From positions 186,001-250,000 of IMG/VR virus record IMGVR_UViG_3300035180_001778: 64,000 nt of DNA; one strand, given 5' to 3'. This document shows positions 54,297 through 64,000 of the stretch, piece after piece. The notes beneath the pieces are model-generated. The model worked only from the letters and a program-made list of their open reading frames with translations. It was not told where the DNA came from and ran no database searches. Every line of letters starts with the position of its first letter. Position 1 is the stretch's first letter. A program made the translations under genes and the position numbers.

Positions 54297-56015
<1,719 letters not shown>

Positions 56016-56399
56016 TCAATTTCTCCGGTTGGTCTGCCCCGACCTATACACCACGGCGATCTCATCAGGGTCAAGATCCGCCGGGTCAGGCACAGGGATA
56101 CCAGGATGAGACATCGGACCGGGTTTCGGAGGGGGCGTCTCGAAGTGTCGAGGCCTCCAGAAGGGACGCGAGGCCTCATTCTTCCGCGCCCAGAGCCACC
56201 CATACGCATCGAGCAACACGATACGAAGGTCGGGGTTCTCGCGAGCCCAGACAACCTTCTCATCCGCGTCCGTGTAGGAGGCCCAGTAGAAGCTCTCAAC
56301 CAGCTCGAAGCTGAACCGCCAACCAGGAGGGAGGGCGGTATGTACCGCAGCCTCGATCTCCCCCGGAGTCCAGGCGGTCATCTCCTGGAGTGAGAACAT
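56016..56399 (-). CDS. Hypothetical protein
   Basis: ORF abuts the groEL start. Confidence 0.5.
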
Positions 56400-56623
56400 C
56401 TACTTCCAACGTCCGCGTTTTTCGCGAGGCACAGGCCAGAGTCCTTGTGCCTCCAAAACAGAACGAAGCTCCAAGATCCGGATCTTGGAGCTTCGTCTCC
56501 AACGTCGAAGTGACCAGCGTAGCTTCAGAGCTAGACGATGCGCTCGTGACTTCCCAATCGACAGAGCCCACTCGGCTTCGTGCTCTTTTGAGACTGCCCG
56601 AGATTTACGACTGGGGGTCATTT

Positions 56624-56698
56624 TGGAGCTGACGAGGGGAGTCGAACCCCTAACCAACAGTTTACAAAACTGCTGCACTTCCATTGTGCTACGCCAGC
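56624..56698 (-). tRNA. tRNA-Thr(UGU)
   Basis: Canonical cloverleaf, anticodon loop UUUGUAA, CCA encoded. Confidence 0.9.
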
Positions 56699-56775
56699 AT
56701 AGACCTCGCCCCACCTCGACCTAACATCTCTTTGATATGGTTTGTCGCCCCTTTGGGGAATGTGTGAAGAAAGGT

Positions 56776-56860
56776 TGGCGGAAGAAGGAGGATTCGAACC
56801 CCGAGGTTTTTAGGCCCCAACTGTTTAGCAAACAGCCCCCAGCCCTGCTGGTCATCTTCC
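56776..56860 (-). tRNA. tRNA-Ser(GCU), 8/4 fold
   Basis: Acceptor GGAAGAUG/CUUCUUCC, 4-bp T-stem, long variable region, G73, CCA encoded. Confidence 0.85.
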
Positions 56861-56934
56861 AAGTCCCATCCCGCAGACCGTACCAAGGGCCCGCTTGCTT
56901 TTTGGTGGAAAGCCAGGCCGATGGGGAGCCTGAG

Positions 56935-57021
56935 CGGAAGAAGGAGGTCTTGATCCCCACCCCCATTTCTGGGAGCACACTGTTTTCGAGGCAGGTCCGA
57001 CCCCCGGTCGGTTCTTCTTCC
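56935..57021 (-). tRNA. tRNA-Ser(CGA), 8/4 fold, atypical T-loop
   Basis: Perfect 8-bp acceptor, T-loop AUCAAGA, CCA not encoded. Confidence 0.7.
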
Positions 57022-57037
57022 AAAGTGACCTCCCTCT

Positions 57038-57065
57038 GTTACACCGAAGTGTGAGGGACGGTCAA
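57038..57065 (-). promoter_or_regulatory. Phage promoter TTGACC-N16-TGTAAC upstream of the tRNA cluster
   Basis: Motif variant with identical spacing. Confidence 0.65.
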
Positions 57066-57072
57066 GGGTTTT

Positions 57073-57300
57073 CTACTTCCCGGCGTCGAGAAGCATCTTG
57101 CCCGTGGAGCTGGACGAAGACGAGCTGGAGGCCGTCGAGCTACCCGAGCTGGACGAGACCGAGCTGGAAGCCGAGCCGCCCGTTCCCGTGCTGGTCGTCG
57201 CGGTCGGTTGAACCGACGAGCAGGCGGACAGGATGATGGCACAAGCCAGAAGAGCGAGGGACTGCGTGAAACCCTTGAAAAGCATCGGGAAAGTCTCCAA
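57073..57300 (-). CDS. Small Ser/Thr-rich lipoprotein
   Basis: Signal peptide with lipobox LSAC; poly-Ser body. Confidence 0.55.
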   Translation of the reverse strand: METFPMLFKGFTQSLALLACAIILSACSSVQPTATTSTGTGGSASSSVSSSSGSSTASSSSSSSSTGKMLLDAGK

Positions 57301-57321
57301 TTCCGTTCCAATAGAAGCGAA

Positions 57322-57407
57322 TGGCGGAAGGCGGAGGAGTCGAACCCCAACGTGTCTAGCGCTCCCTGGCGTTCAAAACCAGTTTGCCTCCAATGGCGGC
57401 GCCTTCC
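57322..57407 (-). tRNA. tRNA-Ser(UGA), 8/4 fold
   Basis: Acceptor GGAAGGCG/CGCCUUCC, T-stem GGGG/CCUC, G73, CCA encoded. Confidence 0.85.
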
Positions 57408-57444
57408 AAGCGGACGTACTACCTACGTCCTTTCTACAAATCGA

Positions 57445-58026
57445 TCAAGGGTTTGTAGACGGAATCTCGATGTAGCCCCGGAAGGTAAGAGAGATCCTCT
57501 CACCACACTGCACGGGGCTCTTGGGGATCCTGTGCATGTGCGTGTTCTGCATCCCGGGGGCCATGAGGGCGAGGGACCCGTGCTGGAGCTTCAGCCGCTC
57601 GGGATCGAGCTGAACCGGAAGCTCAGGGCGAGCTTCCATGATCTGCTTGAACCAAATCTCGCGCTCGAATACAAGCGACACGATCCCGATGGGACGGGCG
57701 TCGTCCATCTCGGGCGAGTCATCGGCGTGCCACCCAAGCTGGTCCTTCTGATCCAGGTAGCGGTTGAGGAAGCAGACCTCGAAGGTCGCCCCCGTGAGCG
57801 CTTCGAGGTCCTTCCTGATCTCCCGGATGACGGGATGGTACGGACGAGGCTCGTACAGCCGGCGTCCCTTGCCCCGTCCGTAGACGTAGGGGGTCGGGGT
57901 GTCGTTGCAGTAGTACTCGCACCTGGGAGCGTCACCACGGCGCTCCCAGTCCAGATCATTCCGAAGAGCCGCGAACGCCTTGTCAGGGTCCGAGACGAAC
58001 TTGTAGGTGACGGGGGCCTTTTCCAT
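57445..58026 (-). CDS. AlkB-family 2OG-Fe(II) dioxygenase
   Basis: LNRY, GWHAD, H and RISLTFR motifs. Confidence 0.88.
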   Translation of the reverse strand: MEKAPVTYKFVSDPDKAFAALRNDLDWERRGDAPRCEYYCNDTPTPYVYGRGKGRRLYEPRPYHPVIREIRKDLEALTGATFEVCFLNRYLDQKDQLGWHADDSPEMDDARPIGIVSLVFEREIWFKQIMEARPELPVQLDPERLKLQHGSLALMAPGMQNTHMHRIPKSPVQCGERISLTFRGYIEIPSTNP

Positions 58027-58044
58027 GGGGTCTAGATACACCGA

Positions 58045-58224
58045 AGCGCTCCCCTTTGGGAGGGAGCTTGGACTCGGCGTTTGGGGGTCGTGGCGAGGTG
58101 AAGCGCGAGATCCCCATCCTATGGTCGGGCGGAGAATCCTGTTCGAGGCCTTCCGCGCGACACCGACCGGGGTTCCTGGTTGAGGACTCCCGGCTGTCCA
58201 AGCTCCCTTCCAGAAGGGAGCGCT
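58045..58224 (-). ncRNA. Structured ncRNA A: 180-nt rod with 29-nt closing stem (6S-like shape)
   Basis: 58045-58073 pairs with 58196-58224 (26/29 Watson-Crick); nested inner helices; own promoter. Confidence 0.6.
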
Positions 58225-58232
58225 GTGATCAT

Positions 58233-58260
58233 CCTACAGGTTGATGCCGCTGGGGATCAA
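58233..58260 (-). promoter_or_regulatory. Phage promoter TTGATC-N16-TGTAGG (ncRNA A)
   Basis: Exact motif, ending a few nt before the 5' end of the closing stem. Confidence 0.7.
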
Positions 58261-58264
58261 CCCG

Positions 58265-58545
58265 TTCGTTCGTATTCTGAGAAGAGTCCCCGAACAACCC
58301 CTTGGGACCAGCCTCAAGGCTGTTCGGGACACCGGGATCTCACCCCCAATGCTCTCTTGCCACGTTTTTCCGTCAGAACACCTGGTCGCGTCCTTGCGGC
58401 ACTCTTCGGAAGTCAGCTCGGTTTACGCCGAGCTGCTCCTCTCCGTGGGGACTGCCTTGTATGGCTCCCATCCCCATTCGAGAGCATTTCATGCTGACCG
58501 TGGGGTTTCCACAGTCGAGAGGACTCTTCTCAGAATACGAACGAA
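58265..58545 (-). ncRNA. Structured ncRNA B: multi-hairpin domain closed by a perfect 25-bp stem
   Basis: 58265-58289 is the exact reverse complement of 58521-58545; several hairpins with GNRA-like loops inside. Confidence 0.6.
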
Positions 58546-58547
58546 AC

Positions 58548-58626
58548 AACCAAGGGCGGATTCGAACCGCCTACCAATGGCGACCCTTTTGGAGAGTGCC
58601 CACCGCACCATGCGATGTCCTTGGTT
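58548..58626 (-). ncRNA. Atypical tRNA-like RNA, identity unclear
   Basis: Acceptor AACCAAG/CUUGGUU, perfect T-arm GGCGG-UUCGAAU-CCGCC, long D-stem, irregular anticodon arm. Confidence 0.55.
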
Positions 58627-58632
58627 AAAAAA

Positions 58633-58695
58633 CTGGGCGTCCTATCACTTAGACGACTCTCGTGAGAGAGGAAGGTGTCGAACCTTCATACCCAA
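58633..58695 (-). ncRNA. Circularly permuted tRNA-like module (T-arm, capped acceptor, D-arm)
   Basis: UUGGG-UAU-GAAGG UUCGACA CCUUC-CUCUC UCAC GAGAG-UC-GUCU AAGUGAUA GGAC-G-CCCAG. Confidence 0.6.
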
Positions 58696-58829
58696 CGGGG
58701 TGCCCGATACCAACGGACAGATGGGACTCGAACCCACCTCGACCCCTACTCTAAGAAGTCCGAACACGTTGGAAATTCACAGGTCTGCTTTCCACCGCAG
58801 AGCAAGCTTTAATCGTGTTCAGTCTTCGG

Positions 58830-58914
58830 TCGCAAGCCAGGGAGTCGAACCCCGCTTCACATCGATCACCTTGGAAGGCTGGCCGCCCGGCCACTTTTCG
58901 TCGATGCCCTGCGA
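58830..58914 (-). ncRNA. tRNA-like RNA with acceptor-like stem, T-arm and branched arm, lacking a D-arm
   Basis: UCGCAGG/CUUGCGA closing stem and CGGGG-UUCGACU-CCCUG arm; begins right after a promoter motif. Confidence 0.5.
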
Positions 58915-58921
58915 TGAGGGT

Positions 58922-58949
58922 CCTACAACGGGAGGACCTGCCCGATCAA
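58922..58949 (-). promoter_or_regulatory. Phage promoter TTGATC-N16-TGTAGG
   Basis: Exact motif and spacing. Confidence 0.7.
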
Positions 58950-58961
58950 CCTCAAAGACTT

Positions 58962-59348
58962 CTGAATAGTCGATCTGTGTGGCCGCTCAGGTGCAATCAC
59001 GGTAGTCATGTACCGGAGGATTGCCGATCCCGCCGCCTGGGTCTTCGGTCCGGGGGTGCCAGTTCGCCCTCTACGCTGGCACCCTTGTCCTTCCACACAG
59101 AATCAGAAACCTCAAGTCAGACCTACGTGGTCTTGACGTTGGCCGTTCCGGTGAGTCATGTCACCGAGGCTGCTCCCGCGTTGGCGTTGGGGTCTTGGGT
59201 CAGTGTTGGCGTCGAGTATCTTACCCACCTTGGAGGCATGGGTACCTTCTGAGCGCGCTTCTGACTTGTCCCTGCCACGCAGGCCTGACTTGAGGCGTCG
59301 TACTATTCAGTTGTCAATGACCGAGTCGGCTTTCGTTCTCCGTCTCGT
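58962..59348 (-). ncRNA. Structured ncRNA C (about 390 nt)
   Basis: 21-bp helix 59110-59130/59275-59295 with two G-U pairs on the minus strand; closing helix 58962-58970/59302-59310; twin CAUGAC-loop hairpins. Confidence 0.6.
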
Positions 59349-59354
59349 AGTAGT

Positions 59355-59382
59355 TCTACAGTCTGAGTCGTTCCCTGATCAA
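59355..59382 (-). promoter_or_regulatory. Phage promoter TTGATC-N16-TGTAGA (ncRNA C)
   Basis: Exact motif and spacing. Confidence 0.7.
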
Positions 59383-59402
59383 CCTCGGGGTGTTTTTTCT
59401 TG

Positions 59403-59551
59403 AGGTTCGGGTTGAGCAGAGCACAACCTTCGTGCTGACTCGAACAGCCACACCCAACCTTGGGATACCGGACTCGAACCGGAATACAGAGGCTTATGCT
59501 GCCCCTGTGAGATACCCTTCTCTCCAGTTGTGCTCTGCTCAACCCGAACCT
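59403..59551 (-). ncRNA. Structured ncRNA D: perfect 25-bp stem enclosing tRNA-like arms
   Basis: 59403-59427 is the exact reverse complement of 59527-59551; two UUCGAGU T-loops inside. Confidence 0.6.
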
Positions 59552-59553
59552 AG

Positions 59554-59638
59554 CGGAAGATAGAGGCGTCGAACCCCGGCAGATAAATCCGCCACACCGT
59601 TTTCCAAACGGGCCTCGCTCCGAGCGAGAATATCTTCC
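59554..59638 (-). tRNA. tRNA-Ser(GGA), 8/4 fold
   Basis: Acceptor GGAAGAUA/UAUCUUCC, 6-bp D-stem, long variable arm. Confidence 0.8.
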
Positions 59639-59644
59639 AAAACG

Positions 59645-59762
59645 TGGGGGAGTGTCCAGGAATCGAACCTGGCTAGCTTTTCAGCAGGTCATTGAGAGAA
59701 GGAGCATGTGGCCACATGCTCAAACCTCATAAAAACCCTCGTCTTCCAAGACGAACACTCCC
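59645..59762 (-). ncRNA. tRNA-His-like RNA with greatly extended anticodon arm
   Basis: G-1:C73-type acceptor with CCA, perfect T-arm, 118 nt long. Confidence 0.55.
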
Positions 59763-59764
59763 TT

Positions 59765-59834
59765 TTTGCCGAGGGGAGTTGAACCCCCAACCTTCCCCTT
59801 GTGGGGGATGTTCTACCATTGGAACTACGGCTAC
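59765..59834 (-). pseudogene. Degenerate tRNA
   Basis: Intact D- and T-arms, only a 4-bp acceptor, 5-nt anticodon loop CACAA. Confidence 0.55.
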
Positions 59835-60186
59835 ATCTTGAGGGGGAAGCGACTCTGGCCTTACCCGCGGCCCCCAAGGGGGCGGGCCAGAGTCTTTTCA
59901 CCAAGGCCGGCGACCCTGGACTTCACGGCCCCGCTGCCTTTGGCAGATTCGGGGTAGTCTTACTCGCCTTCATCAGGGGAGCCCGTTTGAGTTTTCCTGT
60001 GGAGGGGTAACTCAGAAACCCAGGGATGTTTTGGACGGCCTTATCCCACCGAGCCGCCAAGCCTCGCATTGTAGCCCGGTATCACCCGGGGGCTTGGTCT
60101 ACGCGGTCTTTGTCCCGCATGGTCATCTGCATGTTTTCACTGTATCTCCTTCCGTCTCCTTTTCGTTTCAGCGTCTCGATGTAACC

Positions 60187-60214
60187 TCTACAGGCCGACC
60201 CCCAAGACGATCAA
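60187..60214 (-). promoter_or_regulatory. Phage promoter TTGATC-N16-TGTAGA at the head of the RNA island
   Basis: Exact motif and spacing. Confidence 0.7.
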
Positions 60215-60230
60215 CCGAATCGGATCTTTT

Positions 60231-61156
60231 CTACTGCGTCTCGGAAATGACGCGGAGCGTATGGTAGAACTGCGGTGCGTCATTCTCGTTCGGGATCCCG
60301 GCGGAGTTGCCGTCGTTGACCTCGATCACCCACCACTTCCCCTCGACATCCTGTGCAATGTCCAGGGCAGCGAAGGGGGTGCCCAGACGAGCCCCCACAG
60401 CTTGGAGCCAGGAAGCCGGGGATGCGCGTCGATGCTCTCGATGTAGGTAGCCCCCTCCGTCCAGTACCGATAGGTCGCGAAGGGCTGCCCCCTCAAGAAG
60501 AAGGTGCGGAACTCCTGAACCAGGGGCATCCGGCTCTTCGTGTGAATGCCCACTTGCTTGAGGTTCAAGAACTCGCGGAAGACCAAGCCTCCGTAGAAGT
60601 CGTCACCCTGCAACCGGATGAAGTTCGAAGCGACTCGGGTCACCTCCGTGGCGTCGCTCGCATCACGGATGAAGCAGGCGTCGAACCACTCGTGCTTCCG
60701 GCTCTTGAGGAAGTCCTTCACCATCACCGGCTTCGGGCCGAAGTTCATCTCCACAAGTGCGGCGACCTGCTCCATGGTCGGAGGCTTCTTCCACGAGATG
60801 ATCGAAGACCTCGGCGTCAGCTCCTTCAGATCGGCGTACCACCGAGGGAGGTCGTGCGACCACATGTAGTTCTCGGGGGTCGTGAGAAGACCCGGGACCA
60901 GCTCGACGAGCTGCTCGAACTCTTGGGGCTTGAGAATACACCCCCGGTAGAGAGCCGGACCCTTGATGCCGCTCCAGTGCTGTCGGTTGAGTGCCTCGTT
61001 TTCGGGAGTCACTCGGAAGGGCTCCCCGAAGACCCCGCCGCTCAAGAACGCGATCTGAAATCCAACCGAACGCGCAACTTCGATCTCGCCCACCCAGGAC
61101 GGGTCAGGAGTTCGGATCGTTCCGGGTTGTGCGGGGAATACCAGAGTGCAGTCCAT
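60231..61156 (-). pseudogene. ATP-grasp (R2K-like) protein, frameshifted near 60420
   Basis: VKDFLKSRKHEW and EFRTFF are in frame; the conserved tail LDIAQ...WWVIEVNDG is in the -1 frame and ends at TAG 60231-60233. Confidence 0.75.
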
Positions 61157-61163
61157 GGGAGCC

Positions 61164-61778
61164 TCAGCGGGGGTTCAGATTCTCGCAGAGCATGTTCATG
61201 AACATCTCGCCCTGCTCGATCGCATCGTCAATAGCGACGTGCGTGTGCCTCTTCTTCGAGAACCAGCGCTTCGGCATGGTCCTCTTGGTCGTCCCGCGGT
61301 AGGGCAGGCGTAGGACAGCGCTCGCGTAGGACTTCACGTCCATGGCCGAGAAGCTGAACGGGCTCATCCCACCGAAGTACATGAGGTACCAGTACACGAA
61401 CAGGAAGTCGAAGCCCGCCGGATACCCAACGAACACGAGGTTCGTCGAGGTCCCAGACGGAACCAAGAGGTTGACTCCCGGTAGCTTCTGGAGCCAGGTG
61501 CAATACCTGCCCATGGCCTCAAGAGGTTCCTCCTGATCCTTCTGGCAGGCATCCCACGCCGCGGGTTGCGTCTTCCACCAGGCCATCGTATCAGGATGGC
61601 CCGCAGCACCCAGTAGGGGTTTCAGGTTCGCGGAGAAGCCTCCGAGGAAAACCTTCTCGTAACGTCCGTTGGTCTCTCGAAGCACAAAGGCAGCGGAGCC
61701 GATGCTCAGCATCGAGTGAGGCCCGGGAATGGGGCCATCGGCCTCGATGTCGGTGCTGACGTAAATCTCAGTAGTCAT
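61164..61778 (-). CDS. DEDDh 3'-5' exoribonuclease (RNase AS/Rv2179c-like)
   Basis: STDIEADGP, GFDF and HVAIDDA motifs. Confidence 0.8.
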   Translation of the reverse strand: MTTEIYVSTDIEADGPIPGPHSMLSIGSAAFVLRETNGRYEKVFLGGFSANLKPLLGAAGHPDTMAWWKTQPAAWDACQKDQEEPLEAMGRYCTWLQKLPGVNLLVPSGTSTNLVFVGYPAGFDFLFVYWYLMYFGGMSPFSFSAMDVKSYASAVLRLPYRGTTKRTMPKRWFSKKRHTHVAIDDAIEQGEMFMNMLCENLNPR

Positions 61779-61785
61779 TGACCTG

Positions 61786-62064
61786 TCAGTACACCAAAAC
61801 ACCCGCCGCCTGAGCAAGCGCGATCAGAGCTTCATCGACCGTCCCAGCATGCTCGTGCGTCAGAACGATGGTCTCCGACTTGGGGGTGTTGAAGTCAGAG
61901 CCGTAGAGCCGCTCCTTCCGGACCACGGACGCGGACACAGTGTCACAGCCGTCGAAGTTCAGGGGGTGGGGTTCGCACTCAACACGAACGACATAATCTT
62001 CCGACCGCTCGCGCTTCAGGTAGAATGCGTTGACGATCTTTCGGCACAAAGCCATGTATTCCAT
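61786..62064 (-). CDS. Hypothetical protein
   Basis: GGTGTA-N9-ATG; the longer ORF would overlap a tRNA. Confidence 0.5.
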   Translation of the reverse strand: MEYMALCRKIVNAFYLKRERSEDYVVRVECEPHPLNFDGCDTVSASVVRKERLYGSDFNTPKSETIVLTHEHAGTVDEALIALAQAAGVLVY

Positions 62065-62081
62065 GGCTAGCCATACACCAG

Positions 62082-62168
62082 CGGAAGAAGGAGGAGTCGA
62101 ACCCCGGGCAGGTTTCCCCACCCACTTCGCTTTCCAAGCGAGCCCCGCTCCGAGCAGGAACATCTTCC
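62082..62168 (-). tRNA. tRNA-Ser(GGA), 8/4 fold (second copy)
   Basis: Acceptor GGAAGAUG/CUUCUUCC, T-stem GGGG/CCUC, long variable arm. Confidence 0.8.
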
Positions 62169-62243
62169 AAGTCTGCAACTACTGAATCCGTAACTGAAAT
62201 TCCCTACTGAGGCTCTTTCTATCCCCACTTTCAAGTGGGGGGT

Positions 62244-62504
62244 ATGACCATGAAACGCAGCAAGTCTCAAGACCGTCTACGCCTTCGAGCGACTCTCCCC
62301 CGAGAGCGCCAGGAGACCCTTCTTCCTTGCCCCGCGTGCGCTGGCAACAAGCTCCTCTTGAAAGAGACTCCCGACGGTCTCTACAAGATGAAGCCGTGCC
62401 GTTGGTGCGACGGTACAGGAGCGGTTGATCGCATCATTCAGCGCATGTGGGCCCGCTGGACCAAGATGCTCGCGTACAACCGCAACAAGGGTCACTGCGG
62501 CTAG
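62244..62504 (+). CDS. Small DnaJ-type zinc-finger protein
   Basis: CPACAG and CRWCDGTG motifs. Confidence 0.55.
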   Translation: MTMKRSKSQDRLRLRATLPRERQETLLPCPACAGNKLLLKETPDGLYKMKPCRWCDGTGAVDRIIQRMWARWTKMLAYNRNKGHCG

Positions 62505-62920
62505 TCGTCGTCAGCCAGGAGGTGCTCTTGCCAGGGACGACCCTCTACACGAGGAACATGCGGCCAGAGAAGAGCGAAGACACTCGGGCTGCACGTTGCC
62601 TTGCCGATGTCCCCGGTTGTGGCTGCCAACAAGTTCTTCTTCACCACGGCATCCCCATCCGAGTACACCTCTTCGATGTAGTACGCATGGTACAGCATGA
62701 CCTTGGGCAAGTTGACTCCAGGTCGCCTCCAGATTTGAAGACGACACAGATCGGGGTGTACACCCCAGTACACCCCCGAAAACATCTTGTTGAGCTTCTC
62801 GACTGCCTCAACTCGAAGGGGGGAGTCATAGGGAGTCTGCTCTTCTGGTCTTGAAAGAATGCTCAGAAGCACCCCCGCGCGCTTCGCTTTCTCTGCGTAC
62901 TGGACAGGATCTTCGGACAT
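62501..62920 (-). CDS. Hypothetical protein
   Basis: GGTGTA-N10-ATG upstream. Confidence 0.55.
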   Translation of the reverse strand: MSEDPVQYAEKAKRAGVLLSILSRPEEQTPYDSPLRVEAVEKLNKMFSGVYWGVHPDLCRLQIWRRPGVNLPKVMLYHAYYIEEVYSDGDAVVKKNLLAATTGDIGKATCSPSVFALLWPHVPRVEGRPWQEHLLADDD

Positions 62921-62964
62921 GAAAAAGGGGTACACCGACCCGAGAGTCAGCGTACCCCTTTCAG

Positions 62965-63525
62965 TCAGCCCGAGGCCTGGTTCTGCTGGAACCCCACGAG
63001 GAAGGGTTCCCAGAGGTCCGACTTGACGTCATGCCGGATCTGGGGAGCCCCCAACGGCAGAGTCTTCGGAGCGTGCGGATGCGCGATGCCCTTCCACGTT
63101 GCCGGGGGCTTGAGCCTCATGCCCGCTTCTGCCGGCGTGCGACCAGCCTTGCGGCCGTTGCACGGGTAGCAGCTCGTCACGATGTTCTCCCACACCGTCT
63201 TCCCACCCTGGCGCCTCGGAACCACATGGTCGTAGTTCAGGTCCTTCCGCGACTTGGTGGTGCCGCAGTAGCAGCACATGAAGTTGTCGCGAGCGAAGAC
63301 GTTCTCCCGTGAGAACTTGACGCCCCGCTTGCGATACGGGACGACCTTCTTGAGCATGGCGACCGCGGGCATCTTGACGACCTGCCCATCACGCTCGCAG
63401 AGGACCTCGTCGTACTCTTCCAGGATTTGGATTTTGCCGTTGCAGAAGTCGACCATTGCGACCTGCCACGGCACGACTCTGTGTGGGGCCATCCACGAGT
63501 TCAAGATCAGCGTATGCGAGTTCAT
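62965..63525 (-). CDS. HNH endonuclease (McrA-like)
   Basis: Start MNSH at 63525; FSRENVFARDNFMCCYCG, DHVVP and WENIVTSCYPCN motifs. Confidence 0.88.
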   Translation of the reverse strand: MNSHTLILNSWMAPHRVVPWQVAMVDFCNGKIQILEEYDEVLCERDGQVVKMPAVAMLKKVVPYRKRGVKFSRENVFARDNFMCCYCGTTKSRKDLNYDHVVPRRQGGKTVWENIVTSCYPCNGRKAGRTPAEAGMRLKPPATWKGIAHPHAPKTLPLGAPQIRHDVKSDLWEPFLVGFQQNQASG

Positions 63526-63577
63526 GGGACACCTTCGTGATGCGCCCCAACTTGGAGCGGCTACCGTTTCAATTGCA

Positions 63578-63654
63578 TGGTGCCCGCCGGGGGATTCGAA
63601 CCCCCAACCTTCCGTTTTTGAGGCGGACGCCGCTGCCAGTTGGGCTAGACGGGC
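63578..63654 (-). tRNA. tRNA-Leu(CAA) with short variable loop
   Basis: Acceptor GCCCGUC/GGCGGGC, A73, CCA, loop CUCAAAA, 5-nt variable region. Confidence 0.75.
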
Positions 63655-63708
63655 ATAATACAGGAAGGCCCTGGTTGCGATCAACCAAGGCCTTCCAATT
63701 CGAGAATT

Positions 63709-64000
63709 TGGAGCTGCCGGGAATCGAACCCGGGTCCGCAAAGCTTCCGTTCCGCTTTCGTTTACGTGCGTAGCCGCCATATCCCTGGCGGCTGGGTTCG
63801 CGGATTTGGCCGCGAACTATCTCGTCTGCTTGTCTCGAAGGGGTAGCCGCCGAGCACGCTTCCCCTTCCAGCCCTGTGGGTTGACACCGGAAATCCAGCT
63901 ACTAGGACGATCTTGCTGGCCGATGGTCACTACGCAGCCATCTGCATGGGGACGAGAGCGTTGTCGTTCGCAGGTATACGTCTCGATTGATTACGGCGGG
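63709..64000 (-). ncRNA. ssrA: tmRNA (5' end outside the window); tag ANDNALVPMQMAA
   Basis: 3' end GCGGACCCGGGUUCGAUUCCCGGCAGCUCCA; tag ORF 63971-63930 ends in AA followed by stop. Confidence 0.9.

What the first reader, a model, noticed from the sequence alone, without database searches (positions are those of the whole stretch)
58633..58695. Circularly permuted, anticodon-less tRNA module (YrlA-like topology)
Seen on the minus strand, in order: 3' strand of the anticodon stem (UUGGG), T-arm (GAAGG-UUCGACA-CCUUC), acceptor closed as a hairpin (CUCUC-UCAC-GAGAG), D-arm (GUCU-AAGUGAUA-GGAC), 5' strand of the anticodon stem (CCCAG), then U6. Known: the T-arm/capped acceptor/D-arm order is the tRNA-mimic domain of bacterial YrlA Y RNAs, and permuted tRNA genes occur in some algae and archaea. 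No Ro60/Rsr gene is visible in this window. Inference: an unchargeable elbow mimic, or a precursor needing ligation and cleavage.
Basis: partly seen in the sequence, partly recalled or inferred. Interest (0 to 1): 0.8.

Follow-up and report, generated by a model that had tools for sequence, protein, structure and literature searches.

The report
Permuted tRNA relic in phage array
A 63-base stretch in the tRNA gene cluster of a giant phage really does fold like a tRNA whose two halves are swapped and whose anticodon loop is missing, but it is found in this phage lineage only. It is most likely a leftover of duplicated tRNA genes rather than a working Y-RNA-like molecule.

Summary
On the minus strand, 58695-58633 reads: closing strand, T arm, capped 5-bp acceptor, U8-C9, D arm, G26, closing strand. 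With canonical tRNA spacing this occurs by chance about 4e-5 times per T arm. Joined in normal order around a placeholder loop, the two halves are called a 72-nt tRNA by ARAGORN at default settings.

The window is part of a roughly 350-kb jumbo phage. The element lies in a minus-strand array of 27 or more tRNAs and a tmRNA. It sits 260 nt downstream of a repeated promoter-like motif and 6 nt upstream of tRNA-Trp.

Membership in the YrlA family fails every test I could run:
- The Rfam YrlA model gives no hit, while a Bxz1 control scores 32.5 bits.
- There is no GNCGAAN0-1G motif.
- I found no TROVE/Ro60 gene in the ORFs screened across about 74 kb.
- G19 of the D loop is an A.

The nearest relative keeps both flanks at about 97% identity but has unrelated sequence in place of the 121-nt cassette. 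No homolog, second copy or parent tRNA turned up.

Other jumbo-phage arrays make the same pattern at tandem tRNA junctions and in decayed tRNA copies.

Best reading: a permuted pseudo-tRNA, transcribed within the tRNA-Trp leader (0.5). A functional elbow mimic is not excluded (about 0.27).

The parts
58923..58950 (-). Promoter-like motif GTTGATC-N17-TGTAG that heads the transcription unit containing the element.
   Evidence: The motif occurs 9 times in the window against 0.1 expected. Four copies precede RNA units of the array on the minus strand. It is conserved in L005.
58826..58912 (-). Conserved tRNA-like RNA #1. It has acceptor CGCAGG/CUUGCG and T arm CGGGG-UUCGACU-CCCUG, has no D arm, and is not called as a tRNA.
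   Evidence: Orphan T arm and fold. About 97% identical in L005.
58631..58751 (-). Variable cassette between conserved flanks. It holds an orphan T arm, an anticodon-arm-like hairpin and the permuted module.
   Evidence: In L005 it is replaced by about 85 nt with no significant similarity.
58721..58737 (-). Orphan T arm GUGGG-UUCGAGU-CCCAU, a further tRNA fragment.
   Evidence: It lies in no ARAGORN tRNA at default settings.
58702..58718 (-). Anticodon-arm-like hairpin GUCCG-UUGGUAU-CGGGC.
   Evidence: It overlaps the direct repeat CCGTTGG, whose copies start at 58716 and 58698.
58691..58695 (-). 5' strand of the closing helix (UUGGG), equivalent to tRNA positions 39-43.
   Evidence: An alternative pairing is shown.
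58671..58687 (-). T arm GAAGG-UUCGACA-CCUUC.
   Evidence: Pair probability 0.99-1.0.
58657..58670 (-). Capped acceptor hairpin CUCUC-UCAC-GAGAG.
   Evidence: Pair probability 0.95-0.97.
58639..58656 (-). U8-C9 joiner and D arm GUCU-AAGUGAUA-GGAC, with A in place of G19.
   Evidence: Pair probability 0.91-0.94.
58633..58638 (-). G26 and the 3' strand of the closing helix (CCCAG), equivalent to tRNA positions 27-31.
58627..58632 (-). U6 tract. Its last four U belong to the conserved leader of tRNA-Trp.
   Evidence: L005 reads CUUUUAACCAAGG at this place.
58546..58627 (-). tRNA-Trp(CCA), 82 nt and atypical, with an 8-bp acceptor and an 11-nt variable region. It follows the element directly.
   Evidence: ARAGORN. 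Rfam tRNA-Sec model 40.6 bits, below the family threshold. Conserved in L005.

Best explanation
The element is a circularly permuted pseudo-tRNA. It consists of the 3' half of one copy of a class I tRNA gene followed directly by the 5' half of the next copy, and it survives as a lineage-specific cassette in the 5' leader of tRNA-Trp.

Inferred origin: two abutting tandem copies of one tRNA gene. Their acceptor strands pair with each other across the junction and their anticodon-stem halves pair with each other from the outside. The outer halves were then lost, or the cassette was swapped in by recombination.

Inferred fate: it is transcribed from the promoter-like site at about 58950 as part of the precursor of tRNA-like RNA #1 and tRNA-Trp, and it can fold into a tRNA-like core. 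RNase P cleavage at the 5' end of tRNA-Trp would leave it at the 3' end of the discarded leader.

It cannot decode or be charged, because it has no anticodon loop, a capped 5-bp acceptor and no CCA. I judge that it has no dedicated function.

Shown here: the structure, the context, the absence from the nearest relative, and the same pattern arising from tandem or decayed tRNAs elsewhere. Inferred: the duplication history, transcription and processing.
For: 1. It is clearly tRNA-derived. The canonical geometry has a chance rate of about 4e-5. The un-permuted halves are called a tRNA by ARAGORN at default settings. U8, A14, A15:U48, G18, A21, G26, G53:C61 and U54-U55-C56-G57-A58 are all present.

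2. There are signs of decay. The D loop AAGUGAUA is the common AAGUGGUA with G19 changed to A. Only 5 of 7 acceptor pairs remain. The cassette also holds another orphan T arm and an anticodon-arm-like hairpin that belong to no complete tRNA.

3. It is not conserved. The closest relative, L005 (AlkB 84% amino-acid identity), keeps the flanking RNAs at about 97% identity but carries unrelated sequence in place of the cassette.

4. It is a singleton. Pattern scans of viral, metagenome and genome collections gave only the same phage or chance hits. There is no second copy in the window, the 10 kb beyond it, or the other fetched loci.

5. The route is demonstrated elsewhere. In 682 kb of loci, mostly jumbo-phage tRNA-array regions, carrying 482 tRNAs, the same T-AS-D-plus-closure pattern appears at an abutting Arg-Arg isoacceptor junction (L033 6058-6136). 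It also appears among degenerate tRNA-Ala-like copies (L052 7945-8098). This phage itself has tRNA genes separated by 1 nt.

6. No partner gene was found. There is no TROVE or RtcB domain among the ORFs screened in the window, which were all those of 300 aa or more plus selected shorter ones, or in selected ORFs of the 10 kb beyond it.
Against: - Both truncation points fall exactly at the ends of the anticodon stem. The junction is a neat 5-bp hairpin with a 4-nt loop. This needs several events, or one unusual one, and looks tidier than random decay.
- Nearly all tertiary-contact nucleotides are intact.
- The same array holds several non-canonical tRNA-like RNAs that are conserved with compensatory changes, so this phage lineage does maintain such RNAs under selection.
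- Only one informative relative exists, so absence there could reflect an accessory element rather than junk.
- No parent tRNA was identified.
Confidence: 0.5

Rival explanations
1. It is a functional tRNA-elbow mimic that works like the tRNA-like domain of YrlA. It would be released from the pre-tRNA by RNase P cleavage at tRNA-Trp. It would then serve as a scaffold or decoy for a tRNA-binding protein, for example a Ro60 encoded elsewhere in the 350-kb genome or by the host, a tRNA-modifying enzyme, or a tRNA-targeting defence nuclease.
For: - It has the same arm order and closure as the YrlA consensus (PMC4201824).
- Most tertiary nucleotides are intact, including the A15:U48 Levitt pair that YrlA RNAs also use (PMC4201824).
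- It lies in a transcribed RNA array next to RNA-metabolism genes: AlkB-like, ATP-grasp R2K and an Rv2179c-like exoribonuclease.
- Some jumbo phages carry TROVE proteins with tRNA-like partners (PMC7824862).
- Phage tRNAs are known to counter tRNA-targeting defences (PMC10264068, PMC11464382, PMC11555353).
- Rapid cassette turnover could fit an arms race.
Against: - The Rfam YrlA model gives no hit at E<=10 in a 201-nt search. It scores a Bxz1 control at 32.5 bits and mere tRNA junctions in L052 at 27-29 bits.
- There is no GNCGAAN0-1G motif.
- No extended Ro-binding helix is possible, because the 3' strand runs straight into tRNA-Trp.
- No TROVE gene was found in the ORFs screened across about 74 kb.
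- G19 is lost.
- It is absent from the closest relative, so there is no covariation evidence at all.
Confidence: 0.27
2. It is a structured leader element acting in cis on tRNA-Trp. A tRNA-shaped 5' leader would guide or protect processing of the atypical tRNA-Trp, or act together with the U tract as a weak attenuator.
For: - It lies directly upstream of tRNA-Trp, separated by only 6 nt.
- The consensus scan lists the D-arm hairpin plus U tract as terminator-like.
- L005 also has a structured, though unrelated, cassette at the same place.
Against: - tRNA-Trp and its UUUUA leader are conserved with a completely different cassette in L005, so no specific sequence or shape is needed.
- The terminator-like hairpin is weak (3 G-C pairs, 8-nt loop) and the tail starts 5 nt after the stem.
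- No promoter-like site lies between the element and tRNA-Trp, so termination here would silence tRNA-Trp.
Confidence: 0.1
3. It is a true permuted tRNA gene whose transcript is circularised or ligated and then opened at the acceptor to give a working tRNA, as in Cyanidioschyzon merolae and some archaea.
For: The 3' half precedes the 5' half. The un-permuted sequence passes ARAGORN.
Against: - The acceptor has only 5 pairs closed by 4 nt, with no room for a 7-bp stem, discriminator and CCA.
- The anticodon loop would have to come from flanking sequence (CACCCCG or UUUUUUA), which gives no canonical loop.
- There is no bulge-helix-bulge motif.
- No RtcB or splicing endonuclease was found among the ORFs screened.
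- Such genes are not known in bacteria or phages; a paper search found none.
Confidence: 0.03
4. It is a chance fold, or a by-product of a protein-coding gene on the opposite strand. Gene callers predict a 241-aa ORF at 58241-58969 on the plus strand.
For: - The thermodynamic z-score is only -1.6.
- An ORF is called across the region in L011 and L012.
- A 14-codon ORF, ATG at 58689 to TGA at 58645, also runs through the module on the minus strand.
Against: - The chance rate for the geometry is about 4e-5.
- The plus-strand ORF has no Pfam match and is broken into 78-aa and 61-aa pieces in L005. It also overlaps a conserved tRNA and a promoter-like motif.
- The mini-ORF has no ribosome-binding site at a usable distance.
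Confidence: 0.02

Closest known systems
YrlA Y RNA-like RNAs (Rfam RF02553; Chen et al. 2014, PMC4201824), including those of Ro-encoding mycobacteriophages such as Bxz1
   Same: The order is the same: closing helix, optional V hairpin, T arm, capped acceptor-like stem, 2-nt joiner, D arm, closing helix. Both are unchargeable when the acceptor is short. An A15:U48 Levitt pair is possible in both. Both occur in phages.
   Different: Here there is no Ro60 gene nearby, no GNCGAAN0-1G motif, no Ro-binding helix, no match to the covariance model, and a D loop without GG. The element sits inside a pre-tRNA leader and is not conserved even in the nearest relative.
Junctions of tandem tRNA genes. Chen et al. 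2014 list these as false positives of YrlA searches, and L033 6058-6136 is an example found here.
   Same: The T arm of an upstream unit, the acceptor 3' and 5' strands pairing across the junction, the D arm of a downstream unit, and the anticodon-stem halves of related copies closing the whole.
   Different: Here neither flanking tRNA is complete. Only the inner halves remain. The junction is shortened to a 5-bp stem with a 4-nt loop (neither arm lies in a called tRNA).
tRNA pseudogenes and fragments in phage tRNA arrays, for example the degenerate tRNA-Ala-like copies at L052 7945-8098
   Same: They are orphan T and D arms between intact tRNA genes, including a 5' tRNA half cut off at the anticodon loop by the next tRNA gene. 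They produce YrlA-like patterns.
   Different: The L052 units keep consensus D and T sequences and resemble their neighbouring tRNA-Ala genes. The element here has no identifiable parent.
Circularly permuted tRNA genes of Cyanidioschyzon merolae and some archaea (reviewed in PMC4090602, PMC3400036)
   Same: The 3' half is encoded upstream of the 5' half.
   Different: Those genes have full acceptor stems with an intervening sequence that is processed, a complete anticodon loop formed after circularisation at a bulge-helix-bulge motif, and dedicated splicing enzymes. None of these is present here.

Membership tests
YrlA (RF02553) | tRNA-like domain with the order T arm, capped acceptor-like stem, D arm, closed by a helix | tested here: met
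.
YrlA (RF02553) | Match to the family covariance model | tested here: not met
   No YrlA match at E<=10 in window 58600-58800, nor in 56000-64000. Controls: Bxz1 32.5 bits and L052 junctions 27-29 bits. All controls are below the gathering score of 69.
YrlA (RF02553) | GNCGAAN0-1G motif near the 5' end (putative Ro60 contact; PMC4201824) | tested here: not met
   None on the minus strand between 58000 and 59600. The nearest near-miss is GUCGAGG at 58743.
YrlA (RF02553) | Encoded within about 4 kb of a Ro60/TROVE gene on the same strand (PMC4201824) | tested here: not met
   Neighbouring genes are AlkB-like, GroEL-like, ATP-grasp, an Rv2179c-like exoribonuclease and HNH. No TROVE domain in any window ORF of 300 aa or more, nor in the shorter ORFs screened in the window and in the 10 kb beyond it. 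The rest of the 350-kb genome was not seen.
YrlA (RF02553) | Conserved D loop with GG and T loop able to form the elbow | tested here: inconclusive
   The T loop UUCGACA is canonical. The D loop AAGUGAUA has G18 but A at position 19. Elbow formation was not modelled.
YrlA (RF02553) | Bound by Ro60/Rsr and modified by TruB or DusA | not testable with these tools
   Needs immunoprecipitation and modification mapping.
Permuted tRNA gene | 3' half upstream of 5' half of one tRNA | tested here: met
   Un-permuted in silico, the halves give an ARAGORN tRNA at the default threshold.
Permuted tRNA gene | Full 7-bp acceptor with processable intervening sequence, and an anticodon loop restored on joining the ends | tested here: not met
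   The stem is 5 bp with a 4-nt loop. A placeholder loop had to be added to obtain a tRNA call.
Permuted tRNA gene | Circular or ligated processing intermediate | not testable with these tools
   No RNA run was listed for this stretch.
Canonical tRNA | Detected by ARAGORN or the Rfam tRNA model in genomic order | tested here: not met
   Only a poor 83-nt model at the 90% threshold, with 2 acceptor mismatches and a T-loop-like D arm.
Tandem tRNA junction | T arm and D arm each belong to a complete adjacent tRNA gene | tested here: not met
   Neither arm lies in an ARAGORN tRNA. The sequence after CCCAG cannot complete an anticodon arm.

The most novel reading that the evidence does not exclude
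It is a phage-encoded tRNA-elbow mimic with YrlA topology, independent of an adjacent Ro60 gene. It would be cut out of a pre-tRNA leader by RNase P and used as a fast-evolving decoy or scaffold for a host or phage tRNA-binding factor. That factor could be a tRNA-targeting defence nuclease that needs the tRNA body but finds no anticodon loop to cut.
Probability: 0.15. Interest if true: 0.75.

Novelty: new variant of a known kind. Interest (0 to 1): 0.3.

Why it matters
If the element is only a relic, it still has two uses. It is a clean natural example of how tandem tRNA duplication plus truncation yields the T-acceptor-D topology that YrlA RNAs use, which is a plausible evolutionary route to Y-RNA-like tRNA mimics. 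It is also a caution for covariance-model screens in phage tRNA arrays.

If it were functional, it would be the first YrlA-type mimic without an adjacent Ro60 gene and embedded in a pre-tRNA. That would bear on how jumbo phages manage or protect their tRNA pools.

The surrounding array holds several conserved tRNA-like RNAs that match no Rfam family, and these look more promising than the finding itself.

Tried and rejected
**Homolog searches**
- GenBank phages, near and distant modes: no match.
- Exact and gapped patterns of the module in viral contigs: the same phage only.
- The same gapped pattern in metagenome contigs: two chance hits inside coding sequence.
- D loop plus T loop in canonical tRNA order in 185,579 genomes and in viral contigs: ten chance hits in the genomes, of which the eight checked with ARAGORN contain no tRNA, and none in viral contigs.
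- Flank patterns (tRNA-Trp, tRNA-like #1): the same phage in viral contigs and nothing in metagenome contigs.

**Relatives found through the neighbouring AlkB-like protein**
- L005 is the only syntenic relative.
- L006-L008 and L014-L016 are not syntenic.

**Sequencing runs**
- Four DNA runs hold the identical sequence.
- Three runs hold relatives only as contigs of 151-196 nt that stop short of the cassette.
- No RNA run was listed.

**Other dead ends**
- Looking up the HNH ORF by exact protein failed.
- Similarity of the cassette to the L005 cassette equals that of shuffles. Similarity to the phage's own 27 tRNAs is limited to generic T-loop matches.
- A split or intron-bearing tandem was rejected because no other half-copies exist.
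- The antisense 241-aa ORF and the 14-codon mini-ORF were rejected.
- An intrinsic terminator was rejected as weak, and it would silence tRNA-Trp.
- I did not screen the remaining roughly 275 kb of the phage genome for TROVE or RtcB, because the tools fetch only 10 kb around a match.

Full report
**What the window is**

The 64-kb window is part of a jumbo phage genome of about 350 kb. The source contig is IMGVR_UViG_3300035180_001778, and near-identical contigs occur in four sediment or microbial-mat metagenomes.

Pfam finds a typical large-phage replication set: ribonucleotide reductase, clamp-loader subunits, RecA, a RecD2-like helicase, an NAD-dependent ligase, a GroEL-like chaperonin and a weak terminase match.

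From about 56.6 kb to the window end, and for 10 kb beyond it, the minus strand carries an RNA gene array. It holds at least 27 tRNAs and a tmRNA. Between them lie small genes for an AlkB-like dioxygenase, an ATP-grasp R2K protein, an Rv2179c-like exoribonuclease and HNH endonucleases.

A motif, GTTGATC-N17-TGTAG, occurs nine times in the window against 0.1 expected. It precedes each RNA unit of the array, so I read it as the phage's promoter.

**The observation**

- UUGGG (58695-91)
- UAU
- T arm GAAGG-UUCGACA-CCUUC (58687-71)
- CUCUC-UCAC-GAGAG (58670-57)
- UC
- D arm GUCU-AAGUGAUA-GGAC (58654-39)
- G
- CCCAG (58637-33)
- U6

RNAfold returns this four-helix junction as the minimum-energy structure of the 74-nt stretch. 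It returns it again inside the 376-nt putative precursor. In the ensemble, the T, acceptor and D hairpins have pair probabilities above 0.9.

I required tRNA-canonical geometry: an acceptor stem abutting the T stem, a 2-nt joiner, a 4-bp D stem, one nucleotide, then a 5-bp closure 3-5 nt before the T stem. Under those rules, shuffled flanks reproduce the arrangement 4e-5 times per T arm.

I then joined the 5' part, a placeholder 7-nt loop and the 3' part in normal order. ARAGORN calls the result a 72-nt tRNA at its default threshold.

U8, A14, A15:U48, G18, A21, G26, G53:C61 and the T loop are all canonical.

Three qualifications apply.
- The closing helix competes with GGGC/GCCC plus a variable-arm hairpin, with probability 0.85 against 0.14 in a 91-nt context. 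That alternative resembles YrlA's optional V stem even more closely.
- The thermodynamic z-score is unremarkable at -1.6.
- Four of the six U belong to the conserved leader of tRNA-Trp.

**Context**

The element lies 260 nt downstream of a promoter-like motif (58950-58923) and 6 nt upstream of tRNA-Trp (58627-58546). A conserved tRNA-like RNA lies upstream at 58912-58826. No promoter-like site or convincing terminator lies in between.

It is therefore very probably transcribed as part of the pre-tRNA-Trp leader. RNase P cleavage at tRNA-Trp would define its 3' end. This step is inferred, because no RNA run was listed.

**Comparative evidence**

Four contigs of the same phage are identical across the element.

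The only diverged syntenic relative is L005, whose AlkB-like protein is 84% identical. It keeps the upstream tRNA-like RNA and tRNA-Trp at about 97% nucleotide identity. Between the conserved flanks (left flank GUGYUCGGAYUUCU, right flank UUUUAACCAAGG) it carries about 85 nt that are no more similar to the window's 121-nt cassette than shuffled sequence is. That L005 cassette has no T loop.

Pattern scans of viral, metagenome and genome collections found no other copy. They also found no canonical tRNA sharing this D loop and T loop.

Neither half recurs in the window, in the next 10 kb or in the other fetched loci. None of the phage's own tRNAs is a recognisable parent.

There is thus no covariation evidence at all.

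**Is it a YrlA?**

Rfam holds a YrlA model, RF02553. As a control, I fetched mycobacteriophage Bxz1, where the model finds a YrlA-like RNA 190 nt upstream of the Ro-like gene gp220 at 32.5 bits.

On the target region the model reports nothing at E<=10, even in a 201-nt search with lax filters.

The GNCGAAN0-1G motif that Chen et al. (PMC4201824) link to Ro60 binding is absent from the minus strand between 58000 and 59600.

The 3' closing strand runs straight into tRNA-Trp, so there is no room for a Ro-binding helix.

No TROVE domain was found in any window ORF of 300 aa or more, in the shorter ORFs I screened near the element, or in the selected ORFs of the 10 kb beyond the window.

The topology is that of YrlA's tRNA-like domain, but the defining family features that I could test are not met.

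**How such a thing arises**

I scanned 682 kb of fetched loci, mostly jumbo-phage tRNA-array regions, carrying 482 ARAGORN tRNAs, with a lenient T-AS-D-closure descriptor. About half of the 32 hits have both arms inside called tRNAs.

The clearest junction is two abutting tRNA-Arg isoacceptors in L033. There the acceptor 3' strand plus CCA plus the next acceptor 5' strand form an 8-bp hairpin, and the shared anticodon stem closes the whole.

Only two well-formed hits have both arms outside called tRNAs. One is the target. The other is L052 8012-8092, which lies in a run of degenerate tRNA-Ala-like copies between two intact tRNA-Ala genes. That run includes a 5' half cut off at its anticodon loop by the next tRNA, exactly as in the window. 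The YrlA model scores two junctions in that run at 29.1 and 27.3 bits, close to the genuine Bxz1 RNA.

The window's phage itself has tRNA genes only 1 nt apart.

Two abutting copies of one class I tRNA that lose their outer halves would give precisely the observed unit. They would also explain why the outer strands are complementary. The expected junction CUCUCUC-A-GAGAGAG differs from the observed CUCUCUC-A-C-GAGAG by one small change.

The cassette shows further marks of rearrangement: another orphan T arm (58737-21), an anticodon-arm-like hairpin (58718-02) and a direct repeat CCGTTGG (copies starting at 58716 and 58698).

**Weighing the readings**

In favour of a relic:
- loss of G19;
- the shortened acceptor;
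- singleton status;
- replacement in the nearest relative;
- no partner gene found;
- a demonstrated mechanism for making such units.

In favour of function:
- the tidy symmetry of the unit;
- the intact tertiary nucleotides;
- the fact that this array maintains other odd tRNA-like RNAs under selection, for example a 26-bp-stem RNA with two T-loop hairpins and seven compensatory changes between the window and L005.

My probabilities are:
- relic: 0.5;
- functional YrlA-like mimic or decoy: 0.27;
- cis-acting leader structure: 0.1;
- true permuted pre-tRNA: 0.03;
- chance or coding artefact: 0.02.

**Verdict**

This is a real and rather elegant permuted tRNA-like unit. It is best explained as a by-product of tRNA gene duplication and truncation in a highly mosaic phage tRNA array.

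It works like nothing in particular, as far as the evidence goes. It looks like YrlA's tRNA domain but is not a member of that family.

Interest is modest, and the conserved unannotated RNAs around it deserve more attention than the element itself.

Noticed in passing
window 59403-59551 (-); L005 2994-3142: A structured RNA of about 150 nt, closed by a 26-bp stem and holding two T-loop-like hairpins (CCGG-UUCGAGU-CCGG and CUG-UUCGAGU-CAG). It is conserved in L005, with 7 double compensatory changes in the long stem. No credible Rfam match: nothing in the window, and only a weak sub-threshold mir-15 hit on the L005 copy.
   Followed up: partly
window 59645-59762 (-); L005 2864-2990: A tRNA-like RNA with a 7-bp acceptor (GGGAGUG/CACUCCC), a T arm and a 3' CCA. 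About 85 nt, including a 13-codon ORF, stand where the D and anticodon arms should be. It is conserved in L005 with a compensatory G>A / C>U change in the acceptor. Neither ARAGORN nor Rfam calls it.
   Followed up: partly
window 58826-58912 (-): A tRNA-like RNA with an acceptor, a long central arm and a T arm but no D arm. It ends ...GCGACCG. It is about 97% identical in L005, far above the divergence of the neighbouring protein gene.
   Followed up: partly
window 58266-58545 (-): An element of about 280 nt closed by a 25-bp inverted repeat (UUCGUUCGUAUUCUGAGAAGAGUCC / GGACUCUUCUCAGAAUACGAACGAA), directly after tRNA-Trp. L005 has a 71-aa ORF at this place instead.
   Followed up: no
window, 9 sites, e.g. 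60215, 59383, 58950, 58261 (-): The motif GTTGATC-N17-TGTAG occurs 9 times against 0.1 expected and precedes RNA units and genes. It is probably the phage's promoter.
   Followed up: partly
window 59764-59834 (-) vs L005 2800-2870: The same tRNA gene carries anticodon ACA in the window and GGA in the close relative, an anticodon switch. Its acceptor stem is also poor (4 good pairs).
   Followed up: no
window 59840-60180 (-); L005 about 2440-2795: A stretch of about 340 nt without a convincing ORF, lying after a promoter-like motif and before a tRNA. It appears to be shared with L005, though I did not align the two, and it has no Rfam match. It may be a further non-coding RNA.
   Followed up: no
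L052 7945-8098: A chain of degenerate tRNA-Ala-like units between two intact tRNA-Ala genes in another jumbo phage. The Rfam YrlA model scores two of their junctions at 29.1 and 27.3 bits, close to the genuine Bxz1 YrlA-like RNA (32.5). This shows how easily tRNA arrays mimic YrlA.
   Followed up: partly
window 58546-58627, 56776-56860, 57323-57408, 59554-59639, 62081-62168 (-): Several array tRNAs are atypical. tRNA-Trp is 82 nt with an 8-bp acceptor and an 11-nt variable region. It and four tRNA-Ser genes match the tRNA-Sec model (25-41 bits, below threshold) better than the general tRNA model.
   Followed up: no
L030 1-10072 (beyond the window end): The array continues with 19 more tRNAs and the complete tmRNA (tag ANDNALVPMQMAA). 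A ThiF-family protein is encoded nearby.
   Followed up: partly
window 57445-58041, 60326-61156, 61164-61817 (-): An AlkB-like dioxygenase, an ATP-grasp R2K protein and an Rv2179c-like 3'-5' exoribonuclease are interleaved with the RNA genes. This suggests an RNA maintenance or repair module.
   Followed up: no
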